47,034 nt of DNA from Macrostomum lignano (Eukaryota): assembly GCA_002269645.1 (NCBI GenBank), contig NIVC01004402.1:1-47034 (forward strand). Reading direction: 5' to 3'. Positions 1,948 to 38,961 of the stretch are shown here, piece after piece. How positions within the stretch are numbered: position 1 is the stretch's first letter; each line of letters begins with the position of its first letter. A program made the translations under genes and the position numbers. Under the pieces are notes generated by a model that had not been told where the DNA came from, did no database searches, and worked only from the letters and a program-made list of their open reading frames with translations.

Positions 1948-2640
1948 GGAGAAGGGGGAAGAAGGGGAGGTAGGGGGAGAGGGAAGAGGAGAAGCGAGGA
2001 AAGAAGGAAGGGAGAGAAGGCGAGGGGCAGAGTGGAGGGCGCCTCTAATTTCAAGCGCTGACAAGGTGAAAGGATTAATAGAAGATTATTTAGTTTAAGT
2101 TGCTAATATTTCGAGTTAAGTTACCCTTCACCAGGGCAGTAGGAGGAGGGAAGGTGAGAGAGGAAGAGGAGAGAGGGAGAGATGGAGAGGGAGAGAGAGG
2201 GAGGGAAAGAGGGAGAGAGAGGGAGGGAAAGAGGGAGAGAGAGGGAGAGGGAGAGAGGGAGAGAGGGAGAGATAAAGGGGGGAAAGGGAGAAGGAGAGAG
2301 GGAGAGGGAGAAAGAGAGAGGGAGAGGGAGAGGTAGAGAGAGGGAGGGAAAGGGAGAGGGAGATAGGGAGAGAAAGAGAGAAAGAGGGAGGGAGAGGGAG
2401 AGGGAGAGGGAAAGGGAGAGGGAGAGAGGTAGAGGGAGAAAGAGGGAGGGAGAGGGAGAGGGAGAGGGAGAGGGAAGGGAGGGAGAGGGAAGGGAGGGAG
2501 AGGGAAGGGAGGGAGAGGGAAGGGAGGGAGAGGGAAGGGAGGGAGAGGGAGAGGGAGGGAGAGGAAAGGGAGGGAGAGGGAGAGGGAGGGAGAGGGAAGG
2601 GAGGGAGAGGGAGGGAAAGGGAGGGCAGGGAAGGAACGGA
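1948..2640 (+). repeat. Polypurine (GA/GGA-rich) low-complexity tract
   Basis: Almost pure G/A sequence. The ER-rich and PLSL-rich ORFs here are artefacts. Confidence 0.95.
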
Positions 2641-2818
2641 GAAAGGATGCGACAAGGTGGTCAAAAAACTGACTCAACATATTATTAATGAGAAATCTAT
2701 TGACGTATCAAGTTATAAAAGTAAGGTAAATTTTCTAATGAAAATTCCATAAATCTGAGCAAGCAGTTCATACTACTATTAGTAACGGTACTGATTGAGT
2801 CAAGTTCAACAACAAGCA

Positions 2819-5800
2819 TCACACCATCATATGCGACGGACACTTGATTTCGGACAGTTCATGCGCCGTATACCTGGGCGATCTCATGTGACAGAACTCC
2901 AATAGATTATTAACGATGCCGCGATCGAACGGATTGCGGAAATTGCCATTTGAATCTTTCAAGTAGGTGTAGCGCTTCTTGTTCATGCTCTCGTTTGTGG
3001 TCATGTTGATTGCGGCGTGGTACCACTGAAGATTATTAGGCAGGAAAATAATTAAATCTAGCATTGTCCTACTTTAGCTACTTATATCTAGATACTAAGT
3101 AGTACAAATTTGCTTCAAGATTTAAGAAAAGTGCAAAAAGGTGCAGTGAATTTGTGCGTTTCTGCCAAGAATCGTAATACTGTGCTTAAATTATCTCTAT
3201 GAAAAAACTCACATGGAAGTGAAAAAACAGGCAAATAGAATCACATTGAACAAGTATTAAAAAGGTAATTTGTACACTGCGGTTAGGAAGGCGACTGGCT
3301 GGGGCCAGTGTGTACACTGAGGTTAGGGAGGGGTTATGGGCTGGGGCCAGTGTGTACACTGGGGTTAGGGAGGGGTTATGGGCTGGGGCCAGTGTGTACA
3401 CTGAGGTTAGGGAGGGGTTATGGGCTGGGGCCAGTGTGTACACTGGGGTGAGGGAGGGGTTATGGCTGGGGCCAGTGTGTACACTGGGGTTAGGGAGGGG
3501 TTATGGGCTGGGGCCAGTGTGTACACTGGGGTTAGGGAGGGGTTATGGCTGGGGCCAGTGTGTACACTGGGGTTAGGGAGGGGTTATGGGCTGGGGCCAG
3601 TGTGTACACTGGGGTTAGGGAGGGGTTATGGCTGGGGCCAGTGTGTACACTGGGGTTAGGGAGGGGTTATGGGCTGGGGCCAGTGTGTACACTGGGGTTA
3701 GGGAGGGGACTGGCTGGGGCCAGTGTGTACACTGGGGTTAGGGAGGGGTTATGGGCTGGGGCCAGTGTGTACACTGGGGTTAGGGAGGGGTTATGGCTGG
3801 GGCCAGTGTGTACACTGGGGTTAGGGAGGGGTTATGGGCTGGGGCCAGTGTGTACACTGGGGTTAGGGAGGGGTTATGGGCTGGGGCCAGTGTGTACACT
3901 GGGGTTAGGAAGGGGTTATGGCTGGGGCCAGTGTGTACACTGGGGTTAGGGAGGGGACTGGCTGGGGCCAGTGTGTACACTGGGGTTAGGGAGGGGACTG
4001 GCTGGGGCCAGTGTGTACACTGGGGTTAGGGAGGGGACTGGCTGGGGCCAGTGTGTACACTGGGGTTAGGGAGGGGTTATGGGCTGGGGCCAGTGTGTAC
4101 ACTGGGGTTAGGGAGGGGTTATGGGCTGGGGCCAGTGTGTACACTGAGGTTAGGGAGGGGTTATGGGCTGGGGCCAGTGTGTACACTGGGGTGAGGGAGG
4201 GGTTATGGCTGGGGCCAGTGTGTACACTGGGGTTAGGGAGGGGTTATGGGCTGGGGCCAGTGTGTACACTGGGGTTAGGGAGGGGTTATGGCTGGGGCCA
4301 GTGTGTACACTGGGGTTAGGGAGGGGTTATGGGCTGGGGCCAGTGTGTACACTGGGGTTAGGGAGGGGTTATGGGCTGGGGCCAGTGTGTACACTGGGGT
4401 TAGGGAGGGGTTATGGGCTGGGGCCAGTGTGTACACTGGGGTTAGGGAGGGGACTGGCTGGGGCCAGTGTGTACACTGGGGTTAGGGAGGGGTTATGGGC
4501 TGGGGCCAGTGTGTACACTGGGGTTAGGGAGGGGTTATGGCTGGGGCCAGTGTGTACACTGGGGTTAGGGAGGGGTTATGGGCTGGGGCCAGTGTGTACA
4601 CTGGGGTTAGGGAGGGGTTATGGGCTGGGGCCAGTGTGTACACTGGGGTTAGGGAGGGGTTATGGGCTGGGGCCAGTGTGTACACTGGGGTTAGGGAGGG
4701 GACTGGCTGGGGCCAGTGTGTACACTGGGGTTAGGGAGGGGACTGGCTGGGGCCAGTGTGTACACTGGGGTTAGGGAGGGGTTATGGGCTGGGGCCAGTG
4801 TGTACACTGGGGTTAGGGAGGGGACTGGCTGGGGCCAGTGTGTACACTGGGGTTAGGGAGGGGTTATGGGCTGGGGCCAGTGTGTACACTGGGGTTAGGG
4901 AGGGGACTGGCTGGGGCCAGTGTGTACACTGGGGTTAGGGAGGGGACTGGCTGGGGCCAGTGTGTACACTGGGGTCAGGAAGGTGACTGGCTGGGGTTTT
5001 TATACTTGGATTATGGGGCTGTATAGAGGGCAGAAGAAACACGTAATAGAAGCAAGAAATCAATAATGCAAAAGAAGACGCAAGTCAAGGCGAGTACACG
5101 AATCTCTTACGCCAAAGGGATTCAATACTAATAGCAGCGCACCAAAGGCCATCTGGAGCACTACGCCAATTAAATAGTGATAGCGCGCTGGGGAGCCTTC
5201 GACGCGCCACACAACATAAGTAATAAGCAGCGACAGAACTCCGGCCGCTGTTAGAAATGTTGTGAACAACAGAAAGCTGTGTCTGCGAGGCCAGCGTACC
5301 GGGTTGGTGGGGAGGCAGCAATGTAGGGGATAGATGAATATGAAAACACTGCTACTTTGGCGTTGTGTAACATAAATTAATACTTTGCCGATAACATAAC
5401 AAAGCATATTGAGACGCAGTAATGGGCAATTGAGAGGGCAGAGCGATGAAGGGTAGTATTGATGAAGGGAAGTATAGATGAAGGGAAGTATAGATGAAGG
5501 GAAGTGGGGGATGAAGGGAAAGAGGGATGAAGGGAAGCGGGGGATGAAGGGAAGTGGGGGATGAAGGGAAGTGGAGATGAAGGGAAGGAGGGATGAAGGG
5601 AAGTAGGAGTGAAGGGATTATTTAAAGTGAAAGAGAGTTAGAAGTGAAGGATGTAACAGAAAAGGGAAATTCAGAACTTAAACAGCAATACGTACGAATA
5701 CCAGATTAATTAAAAAAAGTCAATTTAAGCTAAAAAATAGACATTTACAGAAAAACATTTGGCGTATCAACAAATGCAGTACAAAAAAGAAAAGCAAAAC

Positions 5801-8800
5801 GTGCCAAAAATAGTTGTTATGTCAAATATGCCAAATGAGTATTTTCTAAACTCAAAATGCAGGTATGCGTACCCACTACCCCAATTAGTTAGAGGGGGGG
5901 GGTAAAAGTGCAGAATTTTTATCGAAATCTGGCAGAAACGCGCACAAATTAACGGCACTGCTTGAAACTTGAAGCAAGATTTTCAGCTGAATATTGCTAA
6001 AGCTGCAAATATTCCTTAATCCTAATTGAGACTTCTACCTAATCAGTGGCTCTCGCTGAGCTCCCTTTGTCTCTTCAATGCTCCCTACTTCTCCCCTTCT
6101 CTCCTCGTCTCTCCCTTCTTCTCCCCTTCTCTCCCTGTCTCTTCCTTTTTCTCCCTGTCTCTCCCTTCTTCTCCCTGTCTCTCCCCTCCTCTCCCTTTAT
6201 CTCCACTTCTCTCCCTTCTTCTCCCCTTCTCTCCCTTCTTCTCCCTTTCTATCCCTTCTTCTCCTCTTCTATCCCTTCTTCTCCCCTTCTCTCCCTTCTT
6301 CTCCCCTTCTATCCCTTCTTCCCCTTTCCCTCCCTTCTCCCTGTCTCTCCATTCCCTGTTTAGCTCCCTATCCACAGCCCACTCCTAACTGCAGCCCTCT
6401 CTCCCCCCTGAACAGGGCAGCCAGGCGGTCTCACCACACAGGAGGACACAACGGAGCCAACAGTCAGACCGAACGTGGCAATGACGGTGCCAAGCAGGAC
6501 AATCCAGTCCATGCCGCCAAGCCAGAGAGTGGCTGCGGCCAGCACCATGGTCATGCCGCCCAGCGTCATCAGCGTGACAGATAATACGGCGAATGCAAAT
6601 CTTTGAACAGAATAAGATTTATTAACGGCAATGTGTTTCAGCTAGCGGCTTGCAGAGATTAAAAAAATTACGAGCATAGTTAAAAGAAAAAAGGATGAAA
6701 AGTTTTCCAAAAAAACCTAGCGTAACACAACTTGCATAACACTATCTGATCATAACACACCTTGCATAACACTATCTGATCATAACACACCTTGCATAAC
6801 ACTATCTGATCATAACACACCTTGCATAACACTAACTGATGATAACACACCTTGCATAACACTATCTGATCATAACTCCCTTGCATAACACTATCTGATC
6901 ATAACACACCTTGCATAACACTATCTGATCATAACACACCTTGCATAACACTATCTGATCATAACACTTTGCATAACACTAACTGATCATAACACCCTTG
7001 CATAACACTAACTGATAATAACACCCTTGCATAACACTATCTGATCATAACACTAACTGATCATAACATCTAGGAATAACACTAACTGAGCATTTAACAT
7101 CTTACATAACACTACCTGATCATAACATCTTACATAACACTATCTGATCATAACATCTTGCATAACTCTATATCATCATAACACCCCGCATAACAATATT
7201 TGATCATAACACCTTGGAATGACACTAACTAATCATAACACCCCGCACTGCAGCATACCTATTATTCTTGCCAATGCAGTTGTAGATGTACGGGCAGTGA
7301 TGGTCCATCTCTAACACGCAGCGATCGCACACTCGGCAGTGCTTAGCTCGAACAGGTTTCACGCAGCGGCAGGTGTGGCACAGCCTCTCTAACGGGTTGC
7401 CCATCCGGCCCAAGCCGATATCGGCAGAGTTCACCCCGGCCTGCTGGATAGCCCTATCGTATTCTGGGACATTCCTCGGCAAGAATCCCGGATCTGAGGT
7501 GTTGGCGTGATAGAAAGCGAACCACATCAACGCGTTGAGCAATAGGAAAGCCCAGTGCAGCCAGGGGAACAGGTGAAAGGTGAGCGGCACGGCTTTGATC
7601 ACGTAGGTCGGATAGCCCCAAACCAGTATGCAGAACAGCAGGAACAGCATGGGAGCTTTGCTGTTGCCGGGCGGCCCGAATATCAGGTGACTCCAGCGGA
7701 AACGGGCGCCGAGCATGGAGGCTCGGGATCGAATCTCCGCCTTGAGGAAGCGCTCAACCTGATCGTGCCTGCGGCCGGCTGCCAGCATCAGCGGCGTCTT
7801 GCCGTTCTTGTCCGCCACGTTCAGCTCAACCTGCGGGGCAGCATGGGGACGGGCTGGGGATTGAGTCACCCTCCACCTCAGGTGTCAACACCCATCAACC
7901 TCAGGTGTCAACACCCATCCACCTCAGGTGTCAACACCCATCCACCTCAGGTGTCAACACCCATCCACCTCAGGTGTCAACACCCATCCACCTCAGGTAT
8001 CAACACCCATCCACCTCAGATGTCAACACCCATCCACCTCAGGTGTCAACACCCATCCACCTCAGGTGTCAACACCCTCCACCTCAGGTGTCAACACCCA
8101 TCCACCTCAGGTGTCAACACCCATCCACCTCAGGTGTCAACACCCATCCACCTCAGGTGTCAACACCCATCCACCTCAGGTGTCAACACCCATCCACCTC
8201 AGGTGTCAACACCCTCCACCTCAGGTGTCAACACCCATCCACCTCAGGTGTCAACACCCATCCACCTCAGGTGTCAACACCCATCCACCTCAGGAGTCAC
8301 ACCCAATCCACCTCAGGAGTCACACCCAATCCACCTCAGGAGTCACACCCAATCCACCTCAGGAGTCACACCCAATCCACCTCAGGTGTCAACACCCTCC
8401 ACCTCAGATGTCAACACCCATCCACCTCAGGTGTCAACACCCATCGACCTCAGGTGTCACACCCTATCCACCTCAGGAGTCACACCCAATCCACCTCAGG
8501 AGTCACACCTAATCCACCTCAGGAGTCACACCCAATCCACCTCAGGAGTCACACCCAATCCACCTCAGGAGTCACACCCAATCCACCTCAGGAGTCACAC
8601 CCAATCCACCTCAGGAGTCACACCCAATCCACCTCAGGAGTCACACCCAATCCACCTCAGGAGTCACACCCAATCCACCTCAGGAGTCACACCCAATCCA
8701 CCTCAGGAGTCACACCCAATCCACCTCAGGAGTCACACCCAATCCACCTCAGGAGTCACACCCAATCCACCTCAGGAGTCACACCCAATCCACCTCAGGA

Positions 8801-9830
8801 GTCACACCCAATCCACCTCAGGAGTCACACCTAATCCACCTCAGAAGTCACACCCAATCCACCTCAGGAGTCACACACCCTCTACCTCAGGAGTCACACC
8901 CAATCCACCTCAGGAGTCATGAAAGTGAAATTCGCAGTGAGTGTTGGTTGAAAGCATGCGGGAGGATCGACAGTCCATGCTGACCTTGTCCACCCGGCAC
9001 AGGTCCCTGACAGCGTTAATGTTTCCAGCAATGCTGGCCAAGTGCAGCGGCGTCTGGCCGAAGGCGTCCCTCTGGTGCGGGTTGAAGCCGGAGTACACCA
9101 GCAGGCGCATGAGGTCCGGCTGGCCTTTGAACGCGGCCCAGTGCAACGGCGTGTCGCCTTCGTTGTCGCCGGCGCTGGTTCGATTCGCCCCCCTGCTGAG
9201 CAGGTAGCCGGCTGTCACAGTCTGGCCGTATTGGCAGGCGATGATCAGCGGCGTGGCGCCTTTGGCATCGCGAACGTCGATATCAACCGAGCAGCGGTCG
9301 AGCAGGAATTCAACAACTGGCACGTGACCGTTCACGCAGGCCCAGTGAATCGGGTACTGCGCCAGTTCGTGACTGCTAGCACGATGGCAAAGGTTAATGA
9401 CGCCTTTGCTATTGGAGCTGACCTCCGCTAGGTAGGCGACAACATCCAGGTGACCGTGTAGGCAGGCCCAGTGAGCCACCGTGTGGCCGGACGAGTCCCT
9501 GACTGCCAGACCTTCGATGCCGTCAACTGCAGCCGAGCGCAGGAACTGCATGTCGTCATTTCTCGCCGCGTCGAATATTGTCTTTGGCGGCGGCGGCGGC
9601 GGCAGCGGCAGCAGGGGCTGCTGACTGTGGGAGTTGCCGGCTGTGGAAGGGCAGGCTCCATTGGGGCCGTGGCTGTGCCCGTGCTGGCTGGCCGCCTGGT
9701 CAACCTGACTATCGGCAACTCCAGGCGGATGAAAGAATTTCTCCTGCCTCCAATTCCGATCCCGAAGGCCCATCTCGTTGGCTGCAGTTTTGTACACTTC
9801 GTAGAATGAGTCCATGATGGCGCCGGCCAT
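2819..9830 (-). CDS. Ankyrin-repeat DHHC palmitoyltransferase (ZDHHC17/ZDHHC13/HIP14 family, Patsas-like); ~596-598 aa
   Basis: Exons 9830-8985, 7830-7259, [6600-6435 or 5282-5111] and 3025-2819. All junctions are GT-AG and phase-compatible. About 7 ankyrin repeats (e.g. GDTPLHWAAFKGQ, GQTPLHLASIAGN), DPG motif, Cys-rich domain with DHHCPYIYNCIG, TTNE (TTxE) motif and NPFDRG. An in-frame upstream ATG at 9881 is also possible. Confidence 0.92.
3292..4975 (+). repeat. 40/41-bp G-rich minisatellite (~41 copies), one TTAGGG per unit
   Basis: Unit GGCTGGGGCCAGTGTGTACACTGGGGTTAGGGAGGGGTTAT(G). Lies in the last ZDHHC intron. Confidence 0.97.
5111..5282 (-). CDS. ZDHHC alternative exon 3B (TM3-TM4 variant B)
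   Basis: CCTCGCAG acceptor and GTAAGA donor. 172 nt, phase 2 to phase 0. Encodes (R)HSFLLFTTFLTAAGVLSLLITYVVWRVEGSPARYHYLIGVVLQMAFGALLLVLNPFG. Confidence 0.8.
5459..5612 (+). repeat. Short purine-rich tandem repeat (GATGAAGGGAAGT core)
   Basis: About 8 imperfect copies. Confidence 0.85.
6081..6355 (+). repeat. Polypyrimidine (CT) low-complexity tract
   Basis: CTCCCTTCTT-type repeats between exons 3A and 3B. Confidence 0.9.
6435..6600 (-). CDS. ZDHHC alternative exon 3A (TM3-TM4 variant A)
   Basis: TTCAAAG acceptor and GTGAGA donor. 166 nt, phase 2 to phase 0. Encodes (R)FAFAVLSVTLMTLGGMTMVLAAATLWLGGMDWIVLLGTVIATFGLTVGSVVSSCV. Confidence 0.75.
6722..7245 (+). repeat. ~30-bp minisatellite
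   Basis: Unit CATAACACACCTTGCATAACACTATCTGAT, degenerating rightwards. Confidence 0.95.
7866..8918 (+). repeat. 23-bp minisatellite, family CCACCTCAGG(T/A)GTC(A)ACACCCA(A)T
   Basis: Fills ZDHHC intron 1. Two unit variants are arranged in blocks. Confidence 0.97.
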
Positions 9831-9989
9831 GACTGATGAGCGAGTGGGTGCTGATGCTGCCCTTGCTGCAGCTGCGGGCATCGGGAATGAACTGTGCTAT
9901 GTACGTTCAGGAATCTAGTGAGATCCTGCACTAGTATGAATATGCGTGAACCCTATTTTGTAGCTTGGTCTCAAGCATAAATTCAAGAG

Positions 9990-11225
9990 CTTGGATCCCA
10001 TTCTCCCATCCACTCTATAATCCCATTCTCCTATCCACTTTGATCCCATTCTGCAATATACTTTGTGATCCCATTCTCCCATCTAATTTGTGATCCCGTT
10101 CTCCCACTGATCCCATTCCCCCATCCACTTTGTGATCCCATTATCCCATCTAATTTGTGATCCCATTCTCCTATCTAATTTGTGATCCCATTCTCCCATC
10201 TAATTTGTGATCCCATTTCCCCATCTAATTTGTGATCCCATTGTCCCACCCACTCTATAATCTCATTCTCCCATCCACTTTGTGATCCCATTCTCCCATC
10301 TAATTTGTGATCCCGTTCTCCCACTGATCCCATTCCCCCATCCACTTTGTGATCCCATTATCCCATCTAATTTGTGATCCCATTCTCCCATCTAATTTGT
10401 GATCCCATTCTCCCATCTAATTTGTGATCCCATTTCCCCATCTAATTTGTGATCCCATTGTCCCACCCACTCTATAATCTCATTCTCCCATCCACTTTGT
10501 GATCCCATTCTCCCATCTAATTTGTGATCCCGTTCTCCCACTGATCCCATTCCCCCATCCACTTTGTGATCCCATTCTCCTATCTAATTTGTGATCCCAT
10601 TGTCCCATCCACTCTATAATCCCATTCCCCCATCCACTTTGTGATCCCATTCTCCCATCTAATTTGTGATCCCATTCTCCCATCTAATTTGTGATCCCAT
10701 TCTCCCATCTAATTTGTGATCCCATTCTCCCATCTAATTTGTGATCCCTTTCTCCCATCTAATTTGTGATCCCGTTCTTCCATCTAATTTGTGATCCCAT
10801 TCTCCTATCTACTTTGTGATCCCATTCTCCCATCCACTCTATAATCCCATTCTCCTATCCACTTTGATCCCATTCTGCAATCTACTTTGTGATCCCACTC
10901 TCCCATCTACTCTATAATCCCATTCTCCCATCTACTTTGTGATCCCATTCTCCCATCCACTCTATAATCCCATTCTCCCATCTACTTTGTGATCCCATTC
11001 TCCCATCCACTCTATAATCCCATTCTCCCATCTACTTTGTGATCCCATTCTCCCATCCACTCTATAATCCCATTCTCCCATCTACTTTGTGATCCCATTC
11101 TCCCATCCACTCTATAATCCCATTCTCCCATCTACTTTGTGATCCCATTCTCCCATCCACTCTATAATCCCATTCTCCCATCTACTTTGAGATCTAATTC
11201 TAACATCTACTTTGTGATCCCATTC
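9990..11225 (+). repeat. ~25-bp minisatellite with higher-order units (TTTGTGATCCCATTCTCCCATCTAA)
   Basis: Tandem array between the ZDHHC start and the 3' end of the L1-like gene. Confidence 0.95.
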
Positions 11226-11822
11226 TGTATTTAAACATAGCTATAACATCCTCTTATACTACTTACACTACAAATTAGCAGTAGTATAAATATAGACAAG
11301 CAATGAAGCAGACGATATTTACAGAAAAAACATTAAATAAATTTGTGTATTTGACTTAAAAAAAGCATAATTCAAAACACAATACGGAGTTTAACTTGCA
11401 GACACAAATTCATTTAAATCGCATAGTTCAATAAAAATAGCAACTCACTAATGCACTCACAAGTGACTAGAAAAAGGAACTGCTGATTGCATGTTTCGGA
11501 ATGAATTCAAAGGCTGGATTAGGAATATAGATATGGTAGATAGAAAAACTATAAAACAGCAGTAGGGAGACAATCGAAAACTACTCATAACCAGTAGTTA
11601 AGTAAGTAAAAAGCGAGATTTTCTTTTTTTTCAAAAACTTTTTGATATGATAAAAGGTATTTACCATGCTATAGACAGCCGTATTTACAGATACTTGGAT
11701 GGATTGTCTTGTTGATTAAGGGCTAAAATAAAATAAAATAAAATAAAACTGTGCTTTATAAAGTTGATTGTCAAAAATGTATAATTTAACTAAAATATGC
11801 AAATAAGACTACTAGCGTTAAT

Positions 11823-14800
11823 TTAGACTCTAGTCTGATAGGGGAAGGCAAATGACGGGCCACTGCTTGACAATGATGCTGCATTTGATGAAGTTGCTTG
11901 CGGAGTTGTTTTCCTGTTGGGAAGCTGAGTTCCACGTACATCTGTAATTTTAGCACAGATATACAGGTGCATTTGGGGAAAGGTGTGAGAATCCTGTATA
12001 AACTTGTATAAAAATCCTGTTTTAGCCTAAGATCTACTCTAATCCTGTAACCCCATCTACTCTAATCCTGTGACCCATCTACTCTTTTCCTGTAACCCCA
12101 TCTACTCTTTTCCTGTAACCCCATCTACTCTTTTCCTGTAACCCCATCTACTCTAATCCTGTGACCCATCTACTCTTTTCCTGTAACCCCATCTACTCTA
12201 ATCCTGTGACCCATCTACTCTTTTCCTGTAACCCCATCTACTCTAATCCTGTGACCCATCTACTTGAATCCTGTGACCCCCATCTACTCTATTCCTGTGA
12301 TCCCATCTACTCTAATCCTGTGATCCCATCTACTCTAATCCTGTGACCCATCTACTCTATTCCTGTGATCCCATCTACTCTAACCCTGTGACCCATCTAC
12401 TCTAACCCTGTGATCCCATCTACTTGAATCCTGTGATCCCATCTACTCTAATCCTGTGATCCCATCTACTCTAATTCTGTGATCCCATCTACTCTAACCC
12501 TGTAACCCATCTACTCTTTTCCTGTAACCCCATCTACTCTAATCCTGTGACCCATCTACTCTTTTCCTGTAACCCCATCTACTCTAATCCTGTGACCCAT
12601 CTACTTGAATCCTGTGACCCCCATCTACTCTATTCCTGTGATCCCATCTACTCTAATCCTGTGATCCCATCTACTCTAATCCTGTGACCCATCTACTCTA
12701 TTCCTGTGATCCCATCTACTCTAACCCTGTGACCCATCTACTCTAACCCTGTGATCCCATCTACTTGAATCCTGTGATCCCATCTACTCTAATCCTGTGA
12801 TCCCATCTACTCTAATTCTGTGATCCCATCTACTCTAACCCTGTAACCCATCTACTCTTTTCCTGTAACCCCATCTACTCTAACCCTGTAACCCCATCTA
12901 CTCTAATCTTGTGACCCCAACTAACCTCTGCTGTGATTCGCCAGCAACGCAGCTTCAAGCAGTTCAACTCGACCCTGCCGACTGCGGCCATTGGATTCGA
13001 GCATTCGTTGCCTCCTTGGAAACTCGTTTTCGAATCGGCCAGTCGCAGACTGTCGAGCTGCCACTCTGGCTCCAGATGAGCGATGGGCATCCCCGTTGCG
13101 ATCTGTTGAGGAAGTTCACGGAAGAATGAAGTTGCAGATGAGTTGGGATCTTGGAATTCTGATATTACAGTTGAAATAAAACATTTTATTGAAATTGAAG
13201 TAAAGAGTGTGCCATGGTTGCAGTTGCAGGTGGAATAGGATGATTGGAATACAATGGATGGGATAATTAGAATCCAGGAAGATGGGATAATTAGTTATCC
13301 AGGTAGATGGGATGATTAGAACCCAGATAGATGGGATAATTAGAATCAAGGCAGATAGGATAATTAGAATCCAGGTAGATGGGATAATTAGAATCCAGGT
13401 AGATGGGATAATTAGAATCCAGATAGATGGGATAATTAGAATCCAGATAGATAGGATAATTAGAACCCAGATAGATGGGATAATTAGAACCCAGATAGAT
13501 GGGATAATTAGAATCCAGATAGATGGGATAATTAGAATCCAGATAGATGGGATAATTAGAACCCAGATAGATGGGATAATTAGAATCCAGGTAGATGGGA
13601 TAATTAGAACCCAGGTAGATGGGATAATTAGAATCCAGATAGATGGGATAATTAGAATCCAGATAGATGGGATAATTAGAATCCAGATAGATGGGATAAT
13701 TAGAACCCAGATAGATGGGATAATTAGAATCCAGATAGATGGGATAATTAGAATCCAGATAGATGGGATAATTAGAATCCAGGTAGATGGAATAATTAGA
13801 ATCCAGATAGATGGGATAATTAGAACCCAGGTAGATGGGATAAAAAGAACCCAGGTAGATGGGATAAAAAGAACCCAAGTCCATATCCCCAGCCAGCTAC
13901 CTTCGCCATCCAGCAAGCCCATGGGCTCAGCCTCAGTCTCCGGTCGCTGTACAGCACCATCGCTGCCAGCTGGCCGCGGCGCCGAGGAACCGGCGGCGGC
14001 CCGGCGCCGGAGGCCGCACAGGCAGGCCACGCAGGCGGTGGTGCCGACAAGCAGCAGACAGAGGCTGATCAGCCAGGCACCGCGGCCATTCAACAGAGCA
14101 GCGGCTGCGGCTGCGGCGTCCGAGTCTCCGCCATCGTCGTCGCCAACGCCGGCGTTAACGCCAAGGTCCGAGGTTCGAACCCGGGCCCAGTTGGCGAAAG
14201 CTACGCCGCCCGGAGTGGCGACGCGAACCTCGTACCACGCACCGGGCTCGAGGCCGTCAATCAGCAGCCAGGAGCGCCGGCTCTCGCGCCTGGTCTCCAG
14301 CCAGCGATTCGAATCTTTCTTAGTAGAATCGCTATTTATACTACTGCCGACACTTGAGCCGGGCAGTAGTAGCCGACGATACTGCACTAGAAAGGGCCGC
14401 TGAATCAAATTGGTGACATTTAGACCGCCGTTTGGCAGGGCGGCCACAGAAAAAGACGGAGCCCCTGGAGGCAGCAGCGAGTCGCCGACTGTCCGAACGT
14501 CCAGCCAGGAAGGCGGACCATCGCCGGCCAGTGTCCGAGCTGTCAGGTAGACCCTGTAGGCGGAGCCCGGACTCAGGTCGGACAGAGTGGCCCGGCTCTG
14601 CCAGGGATCCGCGATTGGCGGCAGCTGGACCAGCTGGAGCAGGCGGAGGCCTCGGATCTGCAGGGGTTGGAGGAGAGCTTGATGGACTTAGTTTGGCGCG
14701 TATCTGATTAGTTTGGCGCGTATCTAATTAGTTTGGCGCGTATCTGATTAGTTTGGCGCGTATCTGATTAGTTTGGCGCGTATCTAATTAGTTTGGCGCG

Positions 14801-17800
14801 TATCTAATTAGTTTGGCGCGTATCTGATTAGTTTGGCGCGTATCTAATTAGTTTGGCGCGTATCTAATTAGTTTGGCGCGTATCTGATTAGTTTGGCGCG
14901 TTTCTAATTAGTTTGGCGCGTATCTAATTAGCTTGGCGCGTATCTGATTAGTTTGGCGCGTATCTAATTAGTTTGGCGCGTATCTGATTAGTTTGGCGCG
15001 TTTCTAATTAGTTTGGCGCGTATCTAATTAGCTTGGCGCGTATCTGATAAGTTTGGCGCGTATCTGATTAGTTTGGCGCGTATCTGATTAGTTTGGCGCG
15101 TTTCTAATTAGTTTGGCGCGTATCTAATTAGTTTGGCGCGTATCTGATTAGTTTGGCGCGTATCTAATTAGTTTGGCGCGTATCTGATTAGTTTTGGCGC
15201 GTATCCGATTAGTTTGGCGCGTATCTGATTAGTTTGGCGCGTATCTCATTAGTTTGGCGCGTATCTAATTAGTTTGGCGCGTATCTGATTAGTTTGGCGC
15301 CCCCGTATCTTAGCGCCCCCCGCATCTAATTAGTTTGGCGCCTCGCGTATCTTAGATTAGCGCCTCTCATAGCTTAGTTAGGCGGCTCGCGTATCTTAGA
15401 TTAGCGCCTCTCATAGCTTAGTTTGGCGCCTCGCGTATCTTAGATTAGCGCCTCTCATAGCTTAGACTGGCGCCTCTAAAATCTTAGTTTGGCGCCTCTC
15501 ATATCTCAGATAAGCGCCTCTCATAGCTTAGTTTGGCGCCTCTCATATCTCAGATTAGCGCCTCTCATAGCTTAGACTGGCGCCTCTAAAATCTTAGTTT
15601 GGCGCCTCTCATATCTCAGATTAGCGCCTCTCATAGCTTAGTTTGGCGCCTCTCATATCTCAGATTAGCGCCTCTCATAGCTTAGACTGGCGCCTCTAAA
15701 ATCTTAGTTTGGCGCCTCTCATATCTCAGATGCGCCTCTCATAGCTTAGTCTGGCGCCTCTCATATCTCAGATTAGCGCCTCTCATAGCTTAGTTTGGTG
15801 CTTCTCATATCTCAGATTAGCGCCTCTCATATCTTAGATTGGCGCCACTCAAAGCTTAGTTTGGCGCCTCTCTAGTTTGACCCGCTGATGCCTACTAAAT
15901 GCTTCAAAAAGCTAAAAAAATCGCTCAAAAAACTGCCTCAGCCTCCTCACCTCGCTCCAGGCCAGCGAGAAGCCCAGCAACCGGCCGTTGGTCCTGGCCG
16001 GTCTGGTCCAGGCCAGCTCCAGCCGATCGGCACCTGCCGCGCCCAACAGAGCGAATTCGCCGACCGGCCCCGGCCGAGCCTCTCGAGTCCGCAGCGTCAG
16101 CAGCGCCGCCTCGGACGCAGCCAGTCCGGCCGAGTTAACCGGCCGCAGTCGCAAGCGCAGCCAAGTGTCGCCAGGCAGTCCGGTTACTTTAGCGCAGTAG
16201 CTACTACTGCTGGCATTAGTAGTATCGAGCCTGTACACTTGGTCAACTAGAATATCAACAGACCCGGCTAGGCTGGCCTCAATAGTTTTGAATTTTTCAT
16301 ATCGACCGAGCGGTGCCAGCAAATCCTGACAGTCTGCCTGAGCAGCGGCTGCGCACCAATCGACTCGGTAGCCGCGGAATTCGCCGTTCATGCGCTGGTC
16401 AGTCTGGGGATTCTGATGGGTTTTTAGGCGAGAGGGGAGACGTAATTAGCGCCAATATTAGCGTCACATTTAACACCAAAAAGCTTCACATTTGCGCGTC
16501 AAAAAAACGTCAAAATTAACACCAAAAAGCGACACAATTGGCGCCAGGATTAGCGTCACATTTTGCACCAAGATAAGCGTCACATTTGGCGCCAAGATAA
16601 GCGTCACATTTGGCACCGGGATTAGCGTCACATTTGGCGCCAGAATTAGCGTCACATTTGGCGCCAAGAAAAGCGTCACATTTGGCGCCGGGATTAGCGT
16701 CACATTTGGCGCCGGGATTAGCGTCACACTTTGCGCCAAGATAAGCGTCACATTTGGCGCCAAGATTAGCGTCACATTTTGCACCAAGATAAGCGTCACA
16801 TTTGGCGCCAAGATAAGCGTCACATTTGGCACCGGGATTAGCGTCACATTTGGCGCCAGAATTAGCGTCACATTTGGCGCCAAGATAAGTGTCACATTTG
16901 GCACCGGGATTAGCGTCACATTTGGCGCTGGGATTAGCGTCATATTAGGCGCAAAAAAGCATCTCATTTGGCGCCAGGGTTAGCGTCACATTTGGCACCA
17001 GGGTTAGCGTCACATTCGGCGCTAGGATTAGCTTCACATTTGGCGCCAGGATGAGCGTCACATTTTCCGCCAGTATTAGCGTCACATTTAAAGTATTCTT
17101 ACCATTGGCATATCCCAGGCGAGCCACACATCGGCGCCTTCGCTAGGCTCCACTTGTTCTGCTTTCACTTCGGCAGTAGCCGGTGCCATTTGCAGCTGCC
17201 GCAGGCGTTTTGGCGCCACTTCAGGCGCTGTTTCACTGCTACGACCTGAGGCAGAAGCTGTTGCAGCAATCTTGGATGCCGAATTAGTGCAGCAGTTGCC
17301 CAGGTTGTTTACAGAGAGAATCTAGGGCCGAATAGTGGTTCAATAAGTGAGCCATATAGGAGGTAGAGATAGAGCGGAGTGGAGTCGGTGCAGAGCGGAG
17401 TGAGGTGGGTACAGAGCGGAGTGAGGTGGGTGCAGAACGGAGAGAGGTGGGTACAGAGTGGAGTGAGGTAGGTGCAGAACGGAGAGAGGTGGGTACAGAG
17501 CGGAGTGAGGTGGGTACAGAGCGAAGTGAGGTGGGTGCAGAACGGAGTGAGGTGGGTACAGAGCGGAGTGAGGTGGGCACAGAACGGAGTGAGGTGGGTA
17601 CAGAGCGGAGTGAGGTGGGCACAGAGCGGAGTGAGTTGGGTGGAGAACGGAGAGAGGTGGGTGCGTAGCGGAGTGAGGTGGGTGCAGAATGGAGTGAGGT
17701 GGGTGCAGAACGGAGTGAGGTGGGTGTAGAGCGGAGCGAGGTGGCTGCAGATTAGAGTGAAGTGGTTGCAGAGCGGAGTGAGGTGGGTACAGAGCGAAGT

Positions 17801-20800
17801 GAGGTGGTTGGAGAAATGAAAGTTTATTAGATAACTCACCTCGACACGATAGGTGCGATAGGCCTCAATAGGATAATCTTTGCCGTCAATTTCCAGACTA
17901 TGCAACACTAAACAGTCCTGTTGAAAGCCGTCGATTCGAGTCGCATATTGCTGGCCAATAGGAGCGGAGCGACAATCTTCGCATGCGACAGTCAGGCTAT
18001 AGGCAAATCCTGGCCCATTGATGGCCAACGGAGACACCGGCCGCCAGCGAATCCGCAGGCGAGGTGGTTGTCCTAAAATTTCGACGTTGTGGCAGCTGCC
18101 GCCGTCAACTCGAAGCTCGGTTGGATTAGCGGAGGGGGGCTTCGGTTCGGAGCGACAATCAGAGTCCGATGTCACGTCCAGCGGCGGACTGGGTGGGACG
18201 CGGGGTTCGGAGGTTAGGATAGCTCACCCACAATGACAAAGACTCATTGACACGATAGCCTACAATGACAAAGACTAACTGACACGATAGCCTACAATGA
18301 CAAAGACTAACTGACACAATAGCCTACAATGACAAAGACTAACTGACACGATAGCCTACAATGACAAAGACTAACTGACACGATAGCCTACAATGACAAA
18401 GACTAACTGACACGATAGCCTACAATGACAAAGACTAACTGACACGGTAACCTACAATGACAAAGATTAACTGACACGATAGCCTACAATGACAAAGACT
18501 AACTGACACGGTAACCTACAATGACAAAGACTAACTGACACGGTAACCTACAATGACAAAGTCTAACTGACACGATAGCCTACAATGACAAAGACTGATA
18601 CGATAACCCACAATGACAAAGATTCATTGACAGATAGCCTACAATGACAAAGACTCATTGACACGATAGCCTACAATGACAAAGACTAACTGACACAATA
18701 GCCTACAATGACAAAGACTAACTGACACGATAACCCACAATGACAAAGACTAACTGACACGATAACCCACAATGACAAAGACTAACTGACACGGTAACCT
18801 ACAATGACAAAGTCTAACTGACACGATAGCCTACAATGACAAAGACTGACACGATAACCCACAATGACAAAGATTCATTGACAGATAGCCTACAATGACA
18901 AAGACTCATTGACACGATAGCCCACAATGACAAAGACTAACTGACACAATAGCCCACAATGACAAAGACTCACTCAGACGGCGGTCCGGCCCCCGCTAGG
19001 TTAAGCGCCCGAACTCTGAATTTGAGCGCCAAACTGGGCAGCAGACGAACTTCACAGCGCAAATCGGTAACACTGCCGCAGTGCTCTACCGCATGCCATC
19101 TTGTGTAGCTCGAATATTGCTCGGAAAATTCAACCGCGTAACTAGTAGCAACACTATTGATAACGTTAGCATTCGCTGCAGTCTCATTAACAGACTCCGA
19201 CGGCGATGACCAAGCCAGTGTGGCCAGGCCAGAGTTGCAGCCAATTAGCAGCAATTTCCTGGGCGCTCTCGGCGGCTCAACAACTCGCAACAAGCCGGTG
19301 TAGCTTGTGTCGCCCGGATCGGCGGATCTCATACTAGTTACCATGGCAACGGCTCCTGCCGAGCAAGCGTATCTGCCGGCGTGTTGAGGTTGAACAGGTG
19401 ACAGCACCAGCCAGTCTTCAAACTCTAAAAGTTCCGCTTTCGCATCGGAGCTGTCAATCTTGCGAGTCAAAGTTGTTGACGAGGGCGTCAGCGCCAGGCC
19501 GTCTTTGAGCCAGCTGATACTGACTGAGACAACCCCGTTGCTACCCGGAATTGTTGCTAGGCGCGAATCCACGGCTACTCGACAGGGCAGGCGGAGCTCT
19601 TCGGCTTCAGCTGGGTAGGCCCGGCCGTCGGCCAGGGCGTCGGCTGGACCGGCCAGGACACGGGTGGGTTGAAGCACAGTCAGGTTCTGCTGTACAGATG
19701 CCGAGCCTGCGGTGGGTTTGGTGCGTGAATAAATCAGCGAGTAAATATGTGCAGTGTACATCAGGAGTCGGAGCTTATTATAGCGGAGGTGGGGTGGGTG
19801 CAGTGTACATCAGGAGTCGGAGCTTATTATAGCGGAGGTGGGGTGGGTGCAGTGTACATCAGGAGTCGGAGCTTATTATAGCGGAGGTGGGGTGGGTGCA
19901 GTGTACATCAGGAGTCGGAGCTTATTATAGCGGAGGTGGGGTGGGTGCAGTGTACATCAGGAGTCGGAGGTTATTAAAGCGGAGGTGGGGTGGGTGCAGT
20001 GTACATCAGGAGTCGGAGCTTATTATAGCGGAGGTGGGGTGGGTGCAGTGTACATCAGGAGTCAGAGCTTATTATAGCGGAGGTGGGGTGGGTGCAGTGT
20101 TCATCGGGAGTGAGAAATGATTATAGCGGAGGTGGGGTGGGTGCAGTGTTCATCAGGAGTGAGGGAGCTGATTATAGCGGAGGTGAACTGGGTGCAGTGT
20201 ACATCAGTAGTCGGAACTGATTAAAGCGGAGATGGGGTGGGTGCAGTGTTCATCAGGAGTGAGAAATGATTATAGCAGAGGTGGGGTGGGTGCAGTGTTC
20301 ATCAGGAGTCGGATTATAGCGGAGGTGGGGTGGGGCAGTGTACATCAGGAGTGAGATTATAGCGAGGTGGGGTGGGTGCAGTGTACATCAGGAGTGAGCT
20401 TATTATAGCGAGGTGGGGTGGGTGCAGTGTACATCAGGAGTGAGCTTATTATAGCGGAGGTGGGGTGGGTGCAGTGTACATCAGGAGTCGGAGCTTATTA
20501 TAGCGGAGGTGGGGTGGGTGCAGTGTACATCAGGAGTCAGAGCTTATTATAGCGGAGGTGGGGTGGGTGCAGTGTTCATCGGAGTGAGAAATGATTATAG
20601 CGGAGGTGGGGTGGGTGCAGTGTTCATCAGGAGTGAGGGAGCTGATTATAGCGGAGGTGAACTGGGTGCAGTGTACATCAGTAGTCGGAACTGATTAAAG
20701 CGGAGATGGGGTGGGTGCAGTGTTCATCAGGAGTGAGAAATGATTATAGCAGAGGTGGGGTGGGTGCAGTGTTCATCAGGAGTGAAAATGATTATAGCAG

Positions 20801-29873: not shown

Positions 29874-30758
29874 CTAAGCAATTTTTGTACTTTTTTGCTT
29901 TCTGTGTGGAGTGAGAAATCTACCCATTTATTGCAATTATTGCTAAAACTTTATTTCAACTAGCTTTTTAAAGTTGAAAGTAGGTACATTAATTAATGAT
30001 TTGATCATCTCATAACTCTGTATTCGCTTCTAGGAATCTTGCTTATAAGTTTTCAGTTTTCATTTCCAAATTAGTTTTAAAAAAAGCTCGTAGCTCGTAG
30101 TGGCAACCAATATTTTTTTGGTATCCGAGGTAAAAAAAATTATTTGAAAAGTAGGTGAAACATTATACAGTTGAATTTAACAAATTAAAATCAACATAAC
30201 ATACTTTCAATAAATTGGTGATGGTTTCGTATGCTTGGTGCGATTGATTAGGTATAATTTTCTTTCTACTGCTTTGACGCGGTGTTTCCTCATTCTTTAA
30301 TTATTGAACTTTTCAGCTATATTTCTGCTTCTAAACTCTCGTCTGTATTTTTAATTCATTGTTCCATGCATTGTTTATTGACTATGATTGCACCATGTGA
30401 ATTCGATAATTTTTTAAAAAAATATATACATATAATGTCAGCATTTTTCCACTCGGTGATTGGTTTGTTAATTAACTATTGGCTTCATTTTGCATTTTTT
30501 ACCGATTGAGTCTGCGTAGGAGGCAAATAGAAACGAACTTTTACGAATAGGGATCAATAGAATATGCATGCAGAGAGCTAGCTTAAGGGAGAACCAAAAA
30601 AATATAACCAGCATCTACTAGCTTGTAAGTGTGGATATTGTACCAGTATTGCAGCAATAAAGACTTACGAAAAAGATTTCCAATATTCACTCCCAGTTGC
30701 TTATGACACTCAGTTGCAGCCAGTAAACACTGTCAGCTTTTAACTGCTTGCCTTTTCT

Positions 30759-36190: not shown

Positions 36191-36224
36191 TTCGATCGTC
36201 AACTTCTTCACCAAATCTGCTTCT

Positions 36225-36709: not shown

Positions 36710-36750
36710 GATGCAGCTTTCCTTCGAAAATTTCGGAGTCAGTCCACCTT

Positions 36751-36758
36751 CTTATATA
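36751..36758 (-). promoter_or_regulatory. TATA box TATATAAG upstream of the exonuclease-like/TBP pair
   Basis: 42 nt before ATG 36709. Confidence 0.55.
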
Positions 36759-36809
36759 CTTTTCTGGCAGGCAGTTTCAGCCAGGCTGTGTTGCTCCCGT
36801 ACCCCTTGA

Positions 36810-38956: not shown

Positions 38957-38961
38957 GTCAA

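What the first reader, a model, noticed from the sequence alone, without database searches (positions are those of the whole stretch)
5111..6600. Mutually exclusive exons swap the whole TM3-TM4 hairpin of a DHHC palmitoyltransferase
Seen: two exons (166 and 172 nt) lie between the DHHC exon and the TTNE exon. Both enter in phase 2 (completing the Arg of KNNR), both exit in phase 0, and each encodes two hydrophobic helices with very different sequence. Including both or neither breaks the frame. Established: TM3 lines the acyl-CoA cavity, and a single TM3 residue (zDHHC3 Ile182 vs zDHHC7 Ser185) sets acyl-chain-length preference. Inference: one gene makes two enzymes with different lipid or substrate selectivity. 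I know of no such switch in this family.
Basis: partly seen in the sequence, partly recalled or inferred. Interest (0 to 1): 0.75.

Follow-up and report, generated by a model that had tools for sequence, protein, structure and literature searches.

The report
Alternative membrane-hairpin exons in a palmitoyltransferase
A flatworm gene for a protein-lipidating (DHHC) enzyme carries two interchangeable exons that each encode the third and fourth membrane helices, and the same exon pair sits in the same place in molluscs, a ribbon worm and a brachiopod, so one gene has probably made two enzyme versions for over half a billion years.

Summary
The window is a Macrostomum lignano contig. On its minus strand lies an ankyrin-repeat DHHC S-acyltransferase of the Patsas type. 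Between the DHHC exon (ends 7259, phase 2) and the TTNE exon (starts 3025) lie exon A (6600-6435, 166 nt) and exon B (5282-5111, 172 nt). Both have AG/GT splice sites. Each alone gives a full-length protein; including both or neither shifts the frame.

Both versions match the whole Pfam DHHC model and human DHHC20 through TM3-TM4, and AlphaFold2 models a confident hairpin for each.

The pair is ancient. The same A-then-B order, with exons of exactly 166 and 172 nt, occurs in Patella, Mya and Lineus; a Lingula pair has slightly different sizes. RefSeq or GenBank isoform pairs in Haliotis, Pomacea, Gigantopelta and Patella caerulea differ only by this exon. Amphioxus and Drosophila have a single exon.

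In M. lignano only exon A is in the transcript-derived annotation, so use of exon B is inferred. The evidence is an intact frame and splice sites in two gene copies, pN/pS of about 0.09, and a strong match to a B-type profile built without flatworm sequences.

A difference in lipid selectivity between the two forms remains untested. I found no paper describing this switch.

The parts
8985..9830 (-). Coding exon 1. ATG at 9830. Disordered N-terminus plus most of the ankyrin repeats.
   Evidence: Pfam Ank families. Identical to the annotated protein P0121.
7259..7830 (-). Coding exon 2: last ankyrin repeat, TM1, TM2 and the DHHC cysteine-rich domain. It ends ...KNN + AG in phase 2.
   Evidence: The same phase-2 'AA[TC] AG|gt' end is seen in Patella, Lineus, Lingula, Mya and Branchiostoma.
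6435..6600 (-). Exon A (166 nt, 'A-type'). It encodes (R)FAFAVLSVTLMTLGGMTMVLAAATLWLGGMDWIVLLGTVIATFGLTVGSVVSSCV, an alternative TM3, short loop and TM4. It is the form in the transcript-derived annotation.
   Evidence: AF2 helices 485-513 and 517-546 of P0121 have pLDDT 91-97. Between the two gene copies there is one substitution, synonymous.
6085..6350 (-). Purine-rich tandem-repeat tract (R>=0.94) in the A-B intron. It starts about 85 nt downstream of the exon A donor.
   Evidence: It is predicted to pair with the pyrimidine tract at 5650-5450.
5450..5650 (-). Pyrimidine-rich tandem-repeat tract in the A-B intron. It ends about 170 nt upstream of the exon B acceptor.
   Evidence: The same two tracts occur in the second gene copy, L001.
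5111..5282 (-). Exon B (172 nt, 'B-type'). It encodes (R)HSFLLFTTFLTAAGVLSLLITYVVWRVEGSPARYHYLIGVVLQMAFGALLLVLNPFG, an alternative TM3, longer loop and TM4. It is not annotated in M. lignano.
   Evidence: B-type HMM: 38.9 bits and E=5.6e-10 in the window. pN/pS 0.09. AF2 helices 473-500 and 507-535 have pLDDT 83-97.
2819..3025 (-). Shared last coding exon: end of TM4, the TTNE motif, the NPFDRG C-terminal motif, and the stop codon at 2821-2819.
   Evidence: It is the only TTNE-type exon in the window.

Best explanation
The locus is the Macrostomum lignano gene BOX15_Mlig010271g1. It encodes a Patsas-type ankyrin-repeat DHHC protein S-acyltransferase. It contains an ancient pair of tandemly duplicated, mutually exclusive exons.

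Shown:
- Each exon encodes a complete alternative TM3-loop-TM4 hairpin.
- The hairpin fits in frame between the constant DHHC exon and the constant TTNE exon.
- The same A-then-B arrangement is conserved across spiralian phyla, and in three species with the same exon sizes.
- In gastropods, annotated isoform pairs differ only by this exon.
- Exon A is the form in M. lignano's RNA-based annotation.

Inferred:
- In M. lignano one exon is chosen per mRNA. Exon A is the major form and exon B a minor or cell-type-restricted form.
- This gives two enzymes with identical ankyrin substrate-recruiting and catalytic domains but a different membrane-embedded half of the acyl-chain cavity and a different lumenal loop.
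- The B-type arose by duplication of the ancestral A-like exon before the spiralian phyla diverged.
- In the Macrostomum lineage the gene then triplicated. One paralog kept only B, another kept only A, and this gene kept both.

Speculative: the switch changes acyl-CoA chain-length preference, or some other membrane-dependent property such as localisation, partner binding or stability. How exclusivity is enforced in M. lignano is unknown.
For: - Gene model and frames.
- Both isoforms match Pfam DHHC positions 5-133 of 133 (81.7 and 99.1 bits). Both match human DHHC20 through TM3-TM4-TTxE (71.8 and 82.2 bits).
- AF2 gives confident TM3/TM4 helices for both.
- Organism and annotation: P0121 is the window's own protein and uses exon A. 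The annotation is StringTie/TACO RNA-seq based, run with --isoform-frac 0.75, which discards minor isoforms (PMC5730564).
- Conservation of the order DHHC, A, B, TTNE: a second M. lignano copy (L001), Patella vulgata (A 18707-18872, B 18914-19085), Lineus longissimus, Mya arenaria and Lingula anatina. Sizes of 166 and 172 nt are identical in four of these.
- Isoform pairs differing only in this exon: four Haliotis species, Pomacea, Gigantopelta and Patella caerulea.
- Exon B is B-type by a profile trained without flatworm sequences: 38.9 bits, against 10.3 for the A profile. The expressed paralog P0002 scores 45.3.
- Constraint on exon B between the two copies: 4 synonymous substitutions and 1 conservative change (L to I), no indels, while the flanking introns carry indels. 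pS 0.088, pN 0.008, Fisher p=0.012.
- Outgroups have one exon: Branchiostoma and Drosophila willistoni. All non-spiralian hits whose segment could be extracted are of the 56-aa A-like class; about 50 hits, mostly vertebrates and tunicates, were not parsed.
- Paralogs: L002/L003 have B only and L004 has A only. The three M. lignano genes are monophyletic in 98 of 100 NJ bootstraps.
Against: - No transcript, EST or protein in any collection I could search contains exon B of this gene, or of its near-identical copy. Use of exon B in M. lignano is therefore unproven.
- The selection test rests on only 5 substitutions. Exon B's overall divergence (2.9%) is no lower than that of the neighbouring intron.
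- The exon B acceptor has a rather weak, C-rich pyrimidine tract.
- Transcripts with both or neither exon have their stop in the last exon, so the frame rule alone would not remove mis-spliced mRNAs by classical NMD. No exclusivity mechanism was identified for the 1152-nt A-B intron.
- Exon A is so derived that it matches the A-type profile only weakly: 12.3 bits, E=0.035 in the window.
- The functional claim about acyl selectivity has no direct support.
Confidence: 0.75

Rival explanations
1. Exon B is a silent relic in M. lignano. The ancestral gene used both exons, but after the paralog Mlig002723 (B-only) took over the B function, this gene expresses only exon A. Exon B has not yet had time to decay.
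For: - Both annotated copies (P0001, P0121) and the UniProt models (P0122, P0123, P0005) contain only exon A.
- A B-only paralog exists.
- Exon B's nucleotide divergence between the two copies (2.9%) is similar to that of the intron.
- Its acceptor pyrimidine tract is weak.
Against: - The reading frame, the AG acceptor and the GT donor are intact in both copies.
- 4 of the 5 substitutions are synonymous and the fifth is L to I (pN/pS 0.09, p=0.012).
- Exon B's score against the B-type profile (38.9 bits) is close to that of the expressed paralog (45.3 bits). This argues against long neutral decay since the old duplication, given 58% constant-region identity.
- The annotation pipeline discards isoforms below 75% of the major one, so absence from the annotation is uninformative.
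Confidence: 0.18
2. The two exons belong to alternative 3' gene ends rather than to a strict cassette pair. This is the bivalve arrangement, where each TM3-TM4 exon has its own TTNE/C-terminal exon.
For: In Mya arenaria exon B joins a proximal TTNE exon and exon A joins a distal one. Dreissena, Mercenaria, Ruditapes and the scallops show the same coupling at protein level.
Against: - The window contains only one TTNE-type exon.
- P0121 joins exon A to it.
- Exon B ends in phase 0 with a GT donor, and the only compatible downstream coding exon is the same one.
- Gastropods, Lineus and Lingula also have a single TTNE exon.
Confidence: 0.03
3. Exon B is a chance open reading frame or an assembly artefact, not an exon.
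For: An open frame of 57 codons has a chance probability of about 0.065 in random sequence. The region is full of tandem repeats.
Against: - Profile match E=5.6e-10, unique within the window.
- 52% identity to the paralog's exon.
- Present in two independent contigs.
- Same position, phase and size in three other phyla.
Confidence: 0.01

Closest known systems
Drosophila Patsas (CG6618) and the 'probable protein S-acyltransferase 23'-named ANK-DHHC clade, treated in the fly literature as the HIP14L/zDHHC13 counterpart (PMC12795455)
   Same: Same architecture: N-terminal ankyrin repeats, TM1-2, DHHC-CRD, TM3-4, TTNE and an NPF-type C-terminal motif. These are the best database hits (39-52% identity). 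The fly protein is a Golgi-resident palmitoyltransferase.
   Different: The fly gene has a single TM3-TM4 segment fused to the DHHC exon, with no alternative exon (L009). The spiralian genes, including this one, carry two.
The zDHHC3 / zDHHC7 paralog pair, where one TM3 residue sets acyl-chain preference (Greaves et al. 2017, cited in PMC9913408 and PMC7586229), and human DHHC20 structures 6BML/6BMN
   Same: Variation in TM3 and TM4, which form the acyl-chain 'tepee' cavity, is an established way to change fatty-acid selectivity. Both isoforms here align to DHHC20 across TM3-TM4. The position 25 residues after the catalytic Cys corresponds to I182 in zDHHC3 and Y181 in DHHC20 by my own ungapped counting. 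It is Leu in isoform A and Ala in isoform B.
   Different: There the variation lies between separate genes and comes down to single residues. Here a whole two-helix hairpin plus the lumenal loop is swapped within one gene by splicing. No biochemical data exist for either isoform.
Classical tandem-duplicated mutually exclusive exons that swap membrane segments. From my own knowledge, not tested here: CaV1.2 exons 8/8a, SLC25A3 exons 3A/3B, the Drosophila Mhc and Dscam1 clusters.
   Same: Adjacent exons of nearly equal length, in the same phases, encode the same structural element. Exactly one is used. The origin is exon duplication, with deep conservation.
   Different: This is the first case I can find in a DHHC acyltransferase. 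The pair has diverged so far that pairwise similarity is undetectable. In bivalves the choice has become coupled to alternative C-terminal exons.
C. elegans dhhc-4 alternative non-triplet cassette exon (PMC13247117)
   Same: Regulated, cell-type-specific alternative splicing of a DHHC enzyme.
   Different: It changes only a disordered C-terminal tail by moving the stop codon. It does not touch the transmembrane core and is not a mutually exclusive pair.

Membership tests
DHHC (zDHHC) protein S-acyltransferase, ankyrin-repeat subfamily | DHHC cysteine-rich domain above the Pfam gathering score, with the catalytic D-H-H-C motif | tested here: met
   PF01529 scores 81.7 bits (isoform A) and 99.1 bits (isoform B) against a cutoff of 28.7, covering model positions 5-133 of 133. 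The motif MDHHCP is present in exon 2.
DHHC (zDHHC) protein S-acyltransferase, ankyrin-repeat subfamily | N-terminal ankyrin-repeat domain | tested here: met
   Ank_2 E=4e-42, plus other Ank families. The AF2 model's top structural matches include the HIP14/DHHC17 ankyrin domain (3eu9, 5w7i; TM-score about 0.85-0.87 relative to the target).
DHHC (zDHHC) protein S-acyltransferase, ankyrin-repeat subfamily | Two TM helices before and two after the DHHC-CRD, followed by TTxE and a C-terminal NPxxxG-type motif | tested here: met
   AF2 helices in isoform B: 341-366 and 371-393 before the CRD, 473-500 and 507-535 after it. The equivalent helices appear in isoform A. TTNE and NPFDRG lie in the last exon.
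DHHC (zDHHC) protein S-acyltransferase, ankyrin-repeat subfamily | Autoacylation and transfer of a fatty acyl chain to substrate cysteines | not testable with these tools
   This needs a biochemical assay.
Mutually exclusive exon pair from tandem exon duplication | Neighbouring exons of similar length with identical entry and exit phases and canonical splice sites | tested here: met
   166 and 172 nt. Both enter in phase 2, exit in phase 0, and have AG...GT sites.
Mutually exclusive exon pair from tandem exon duplication | The two exons are homologous and encode the same structural element | tested here: met
   There is no pairwise BLASTP hit. However, both align to the same Pfam DHHC columns and to TM3-TM4 of DHHC20, and both are modelled as helix-loop-helix. 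Homology is therefore at profile and structure level only.
Mutually exclusive exon pair from tandem exon duplication | Joint inclusion or joint skipping is incompatible with a functional product | tested here: met
   A+B and skip-both both shift the frame and lose TTNE and the C-terminus. Note that both resulting stops lie in the last exon.
Mutually exclusive exon pair from tandem exon duplication | Mature transcripts contain exactly one of the two exons, and each is used | tested here: inconclusive
   Exon A with the shared last exon is in M. lignano's RNA-derived annotation. No sequence with exon B of this gene was found. In gastropod orthologs both single-exon isoforms are annotated.
Mutually exclusive exon pair from tandem exon duplication | Conservation of the pair in other species | tested here: met
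   Patella, Mya, Lineus, Lingula and a second M. lignano copy.
Steric-hindrance type of exclusivity (intron between the pair too short to splice) | A-B intron shorter than about 50-60 nt | tested here: not met
   The intron is 1152 nt in the window and 1244 nt in L001. The feature is met in Patella vulgata, where the intron is 41 nt.
Competing RNA-structure (docking/selector) type of exclusivity | Conserved intronic complementary elements that select one exon | tested here: inconclusive
   A 266-nt purine tract and a 200-nt pyrimidine tract in the A-B intron are predicted to pair. The cofold energy is -217 kcal/mol, against -188 +/- 7 for shuffled sequence. Most of this is explained by composition, and no cross-species test was possible.

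The most novel reading that the evidence does not exclude
The A/B exon choice is an ancient, regulated switch, dating to before the divergence of flatworms, molluscs, nemerteans and brachiopods. It retunes the lipid-binding cavity of a Golgi ankyrin-DHHC enzyme, or how the enzyme fits into the membrane. The same substrate-recruiting ankyrin domain would then attach different fatty acids, or act in different membranes, in different cell types. On this reading, two later events are evolutionary read-outs of the same functional split. One is the coupling of each exon to its own TTNE/C-terminal exon in bivalves. The other is the resolution into A-only and B-only paralogs in Macrostomum.
Probability: 0.25. 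Interest if true: 0.8.

Novelty: new member of a known kind. Interest (0 to 1): 0.6.

Why it matters
DHHC enzymes are usually thought to gain diversity through gene duplication; humans have 23 genes. How much the transmembrane core, as opposed to the cytosolic domains, determines what an enzyme does is still being worked out.

Here evolution has kept two versions of exactly the TM3-TM4 half of the acyl-chain cavity inside one gene across several phyla. Everything else in the protein is identical. That makes it a ready-made, naturally validated domain swap. Comparing the two isoforms would test directly what TM3 and TM4 contribute: chain-length preference, localisation, stability or partner binding.

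It also adds a clear example of two evolutionary points. First, alternative splicing and gene duplication can be interchangeable: Macrostomum has a both-exon gene plus A-only and B-only paralogs. Second, the membrane helices appear to co-evolve with the C-terminal helix that packs on them, since bivalves couple each exon to its own C-terminus.

Practically, exon B is missing from the M. lignano annotation.

Tried and rejected
- Homolog search with a 170-aa exon-B-centred query returned nothing, because the word index found only 46 candidates. A 316-aa query worked but found no M. lignano protein with exon B. Exact-sequence look-ups of both window isoforms were negative.
- Gene look-ups failed for Mya isoform X2, Owenia and Acropora. 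As a result no annelid or cnidarian locus was examined.
- The fold search of the full-length model against the PDB was swamped by ankyrin-repeat hits and said nothing about the membrane domain. A second fold search, for isoform A, was submitted but not collected for the same reason.
- phmmer alignments to DHHC20 place a 6-residue gap inside TM3, so I did not trust them for residue mapping. I used ungapped counting from the catalytic Cys instead.
- The idea that the I182-equivalent position is the type-defining difference was rejected. It is Leu versus Ala here, but it varies within both types across species.
- NMD as the enforcer of exclusivity was rejected as a sufficient explanation, because the frameshift stops fall in the last exon.
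- A steric short-intron mechanism was rejected for M. lignano (1152 nt), although it fits Patella (41 nt).
- The purine/pyrimidine tract pairing is mostly a composition effect and stays as a note only.
- The original Greaves et al. paper (PMC5338407) is not held. That claim is cited second-hand.

Full report
**What is in the window**

The window is an entire 47,034-bp contig of the Macrostomum lignano Mlig_3_7 assembly. Its annotated protein BOX15_Mlig010271g1 (P0121) sits on a contig of exactly that length, and it equals my gene model plus 12 N-terminal residues.

The gene lies on the minus strand:
- exon 1: 9830-8985
- exon 2: 7830-7259
- exon A: 6600-6435
- exon B: 5282-5111
- last exon: 3025-2819

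Pfam finds ankyrin repeats and a full-length DHHC domain. The closest relatives are the Patsas-type proteins, often named 'S-acyltransferase 23', of invertebrates and non-mammalian vertebrates. In Drosophila, Patsas is a poorly characterised Golgi palmitoyltransferase (PMC12795455).

**Check of the observation**

- Exon 2 ends AAT AAT AG|gt, in phase 2.
- Both candidate exons follow an AG acceptor and supply the last base of the Arg codon.
- Both end in phase 0 before a GT donor (gtgaga for A, gtaaga for B).
- They are 166 and 172 nt long.
- A alone gives a 596-aa protein and B alone a 598-aa protein.
- With both, or with neither, the frame shifts and the TTNE motif and C-terminus are lost.

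**Are both real TM3-TM4 segments?**

The two peptides have no pairwise BLASTP similarity. Even so, each isoform matches Pfam DHHC across model positions 5-133 of 133: 81.7 bits with A and 99.1 bits with B. Each also aligns to human DHHC20 (6BML/6BMM/6BMN) through TM3, TM4 and TTxE, at 71.8 and 82.2 bits.

AlphaFold2 models with family alignments show a confident helix-loop-helix in both.
- Isoform B: helices 473-500 and 507-535, 10-residue block pLDDT 83-97.
- Isoform A (P0121 numbering): helices 485-513 and 517-546, pLDDT 91-97.
- The loop is about three residues in A and about six in B.

**Conservation, which is the decisive evidence**

I mapped DHHC, TM3-TM4 and TTNE segments onto orthologous loci with tblastn. 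The same order (DHHC exon, a 56-aa 'A-type' exon, a 58-aa 'B-type' exon, TTNE exon) appears in all of the following:
- a second M. lignano copy (L001)
- the limpet Patella vulgata (A 18707-18872, B 18914-19085)
- the nemertean Lineus longissimus (A 17443-17608, B 20108-20279)
- the clam Mya arenaria (A 30251-30416, B 31030-31201)
- the brachiopod Lingula anatina, with slightly different sizes

The exon sizes of 166 and 172 nt, the phase-2 entry after '...AA[TC] AG', and the phase-0 exit are identical in Macrostomum, Patella, Lineus and Mya.

At the protein level, RefSeq or GenBank holds isoform pairs that differ only in this segment and by exactly two residues. These are four Haliotis species, Pomacea and Patella caerulea; Gigantopelta differs by three. 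In bivalves (Mya, Dreissena, Mercenaria, Ruditapes, scallops) each exon is coupled to its own TTNE/C-terminal exon. This is interesting because the C-terminal amphipathic helix packs against TMD3 and TMD4 in DHHC20 (PMC7586229).

Amphioxus has a single exon in this position, and Drosophila willistoni has none separate from the DHHC exon. The deuterostome, arthropod and cnidarian hits whose TM3-TM4 segment my pattern could extract are all of the 56-aa class. The pattern failed on about 50 of the 120 hits, mostly vertebrates and tunicates, so those remain unclassified. Those tested score better against the A-type profile. The B-type is therefore most simply a spiralian duplicate of an A-like ancestor. 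This inference rests on limited outgroup sampling.

**Orthology of the Macrostomum exons**

I built HMMs from non-flatworm spiralian sequences only.
- Exon B scores 38.9 bits against the B profile and 10.3 against the A profile.
- Searched against all 999 six-frame fragments of the window, the B profile finds exon B at E=5.6e-10 and nothing else below 0.1.
- Exon B keeps the B-type hallmarks: R-x-S-F at the start, the Gly after position +25, and the E-G...R...Y..G loop.
- Exon A is assigned to the A-type by its position, its exact length and its G-x-D-W loop. It is otherwise highly derived: 12.3 versus 10.8 bits, and 9% aromatic residues against 23% typical.

**Is exon B used in M. lignano?**

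This is the weak point. Every M. lignano protein for this gene or its near-identical copy contains exon A (P0001, P0121, P0123, P0005). I found none with exon B.

The annotation is derived from RNA-seq, so the A isoform has transcript support. It was built with TACO using '--isoform-frac 0.75', which removes minor isoforms (PMC5730564). Absence of a B isoform from it is therefore uninformative.

The indirect evidence favours use.
- In both gene copies the frame, the acceptor AG and the donor GT of exon B are intact.
- Of the five substitutions between the copies, four are synonymous third-position changes and one is Leu to Ile. This gives pS 0.088, pN 0.008 and Fisher p=0.012.
- The flanking introns carry indels.
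- Exon B matches the B profile about as well as the expressed B-only paralog does, 38.9 against 45.3 bits. That is hard to reconcile with long neutral decay.

Caveats: five substitutions is a small sample, exon B's total divergence (2.9%) is intron-like, and its pyrimidine tract is weak.

**Paralogs**

M. lignano has two further genes of this family. Mlig002723 (P0002) has only a B-type exon, and Mlig022279 (P0042) has only an A-type exon. On the constant regions the three flatworm genes group together in 98 of 100 NJ bootstraps. The simplest reading is that a both-exon ancestor duplicated within the Macrostomum lineage and two copies each lost one exon.

**Mechanism of exclusivity**

The frame rule makes double inclusion and double skipping non-functional. 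However, both resulting stops lie in the last exon, so classical exon-junction-dependent NMD would not remove such mRNAs. Some control at the splicing level is therefore expected.

In Patella the A-B intron is only 41 nt, which is too short to splice, so exclusivity there is steric. In M. lignano the intron is 1152 nt.

That intron contains a 266-nt purine tract just after exon A and a 200-nt pyrimidine tract before exon B. In the predicted minimum-energy fold, 158 of the purine-tract bases pair with the pyrimidine tract. The cofold energy is -217 kcal/mol, but shuffled pyrimidine tracts still give -188 +/- 7. The effect is thus largely compositional. Every intron of this gene holds some tandem repeat. 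I record this as an observation, not a mechanism.

**Function**

Reviews state that the four TMDs form a tepee-like cavity for the acyl chain, that TMD3 and TMD4 contribute to acyl-chain specificity (PMC7586229), and that I182 in a TMD of zDHHC3 sets its acyl-CoA preference (PMC9913408). The original paper was not available.

I counted without gaps from the catalytic Cys. This is my own mapping, and it assumes a continuous helix from the conserved F at +15. The I182/Y181-equivalent position (+25) is Leu in isoform A and Ala in isoform B, and +18 is Leu versus Phe.

Across species, +25 is not type-specific. The consistently type-specific features are:
- W (A-type) versus S (B-type) at +14
- the end of TM3
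- the lumenal loop: G-W-D-W in A, and a two-residue-longer E-G...R-x-D-Y in B

A change in acyl selectivity is therefore plausible but unproven. Differences in localisation, membrane fit, partner binding or stability are equally open.

**Novelty**

Full-text searches combining mutually exclusive exons, exon duplication or alternative splicing with DHHC, zDHHC, palmitoyltransferase or Patsas found no description of this switch. The nearest item is a C-terminal cassette exon in C. elegans dhhc-4 (PMC13247117).

The mollusc isoforms already exist in RefSeq, but apparently without comment. Exon B is unannotated in M. lignano. This is a new member of a well-known kind, the tandem-duplicated mutually exclusive exon. 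It is notable for its age and for what it swaps.

**Verdict**
- The structural interpretation, a mutually exclusive swap of the TM3-TM4 hairpin, is strongly supported for the gene family and probable for this gene.
- The functional interpretation, different lipid or substrate selectivity, is an untested hypothesis.

Noticed in passing
window 31375-43659: A Maverick/Polinton-like element. It has a 1220-aa ORF with protein-primed DNA polymerase B and endonuclease VII domains (31375-35034, + strand), an rve integrase ORF (42571-41525, - strand) and a Walker-A ORF that is probably a packaging ATPase (38472-37684, - strand). Unusually, it also has ORFs with TBP-like (36695-35622) and PC4-like (43659-42868) domains.
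   Followed up: partly
window about 11000-25600, minus strand: A large immunoglobulin/fibronectin-III gene lies directly upstream of the DHHC gene on the same strand. It shows Ig_3, I-set and fn3 hits. In L001 the neighbouring annotated product is 1498 aa.
   Followed up: no
window 6350-6085 and 5650-5450 (A-B intron): A long purine tract after exon A and a long pyrimidine tract before exon B are mutually complementary. They are predicted to form a roughly 160-bp interrupted stem that loops out the middle of the intron. Both tracts are present in both gene copies. Most of the predicted energy is compositional.
   Followed up: partly
window 2145-10800: Every intron and flank of the gene carries its own distinct tandem-repeat array: periods of 42, 16/33, 20, 30, 23 and 25 nt, with up to 41 copies. 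These arrays account for the length differences between the two gene copies.
   Followed up: no
L001 (NIVC01000010.1) versus window 2800-10800: A second, co-linear copy of the whole gene exists (Mlig017494g3). Its exons are 99.3-99.5% identical, apart from exon B at 97.1%. This is consistent with the known duplicated genome fraction of the DV1 line. Exon B's synonymous divergence (0.088) is several-fold higher than that of the other exons (0.015-0.022).
   Followed up: partly
L005 18873-18913 (Patella vulgata): The intron between exons A and B is only 41 nt (gtaagcactatacctatgtccttttcttcttatcgtttcag). This is too short to be spliced out, so it gives a built-in steric guarantee of mutual exclusivity.
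   Followed up: yes
L006 30251-33010 (Mya arenaria), and bivalve proteins: In bivalves each alternative TM3-TM4 exon is paired with its own TTNE/C-terminal exon in a nested arrangement: A, B, TTNE-for-B, TTNE-for-A. The whole C-terminal half of the enzyme is therefore alternative.
   Followed up: partly
L002/L003 and L004 (M. lignano paralogs): Paralog Mlig002723 retains only a B-type exon and paralog Mlig022279 only an A-type exon. All three flatworm genes are monophyletic. This looks like resolution of an alternative-splicing pair into separate genes.
   Followed up: partly
window 6435-6600 (exon A peptide): The expressed exon A is unusually poor in aromatic residues (9%, against about 23% in other A-type exons) and rich in Gly, Ala, Ser and Thr (44%). 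It has lost the otherwise near-invariant Trp at the start of TM3.
   Followed up: no
protein cluster of P0016: A 42-aa 'Klebsiella pneumoniae PIN-like domain-containing protein, partial' (P0195) clusters at 90% identity with clam DHHC proteins. It is probably a contaminant or a mislabelled record.
   Followed up: no
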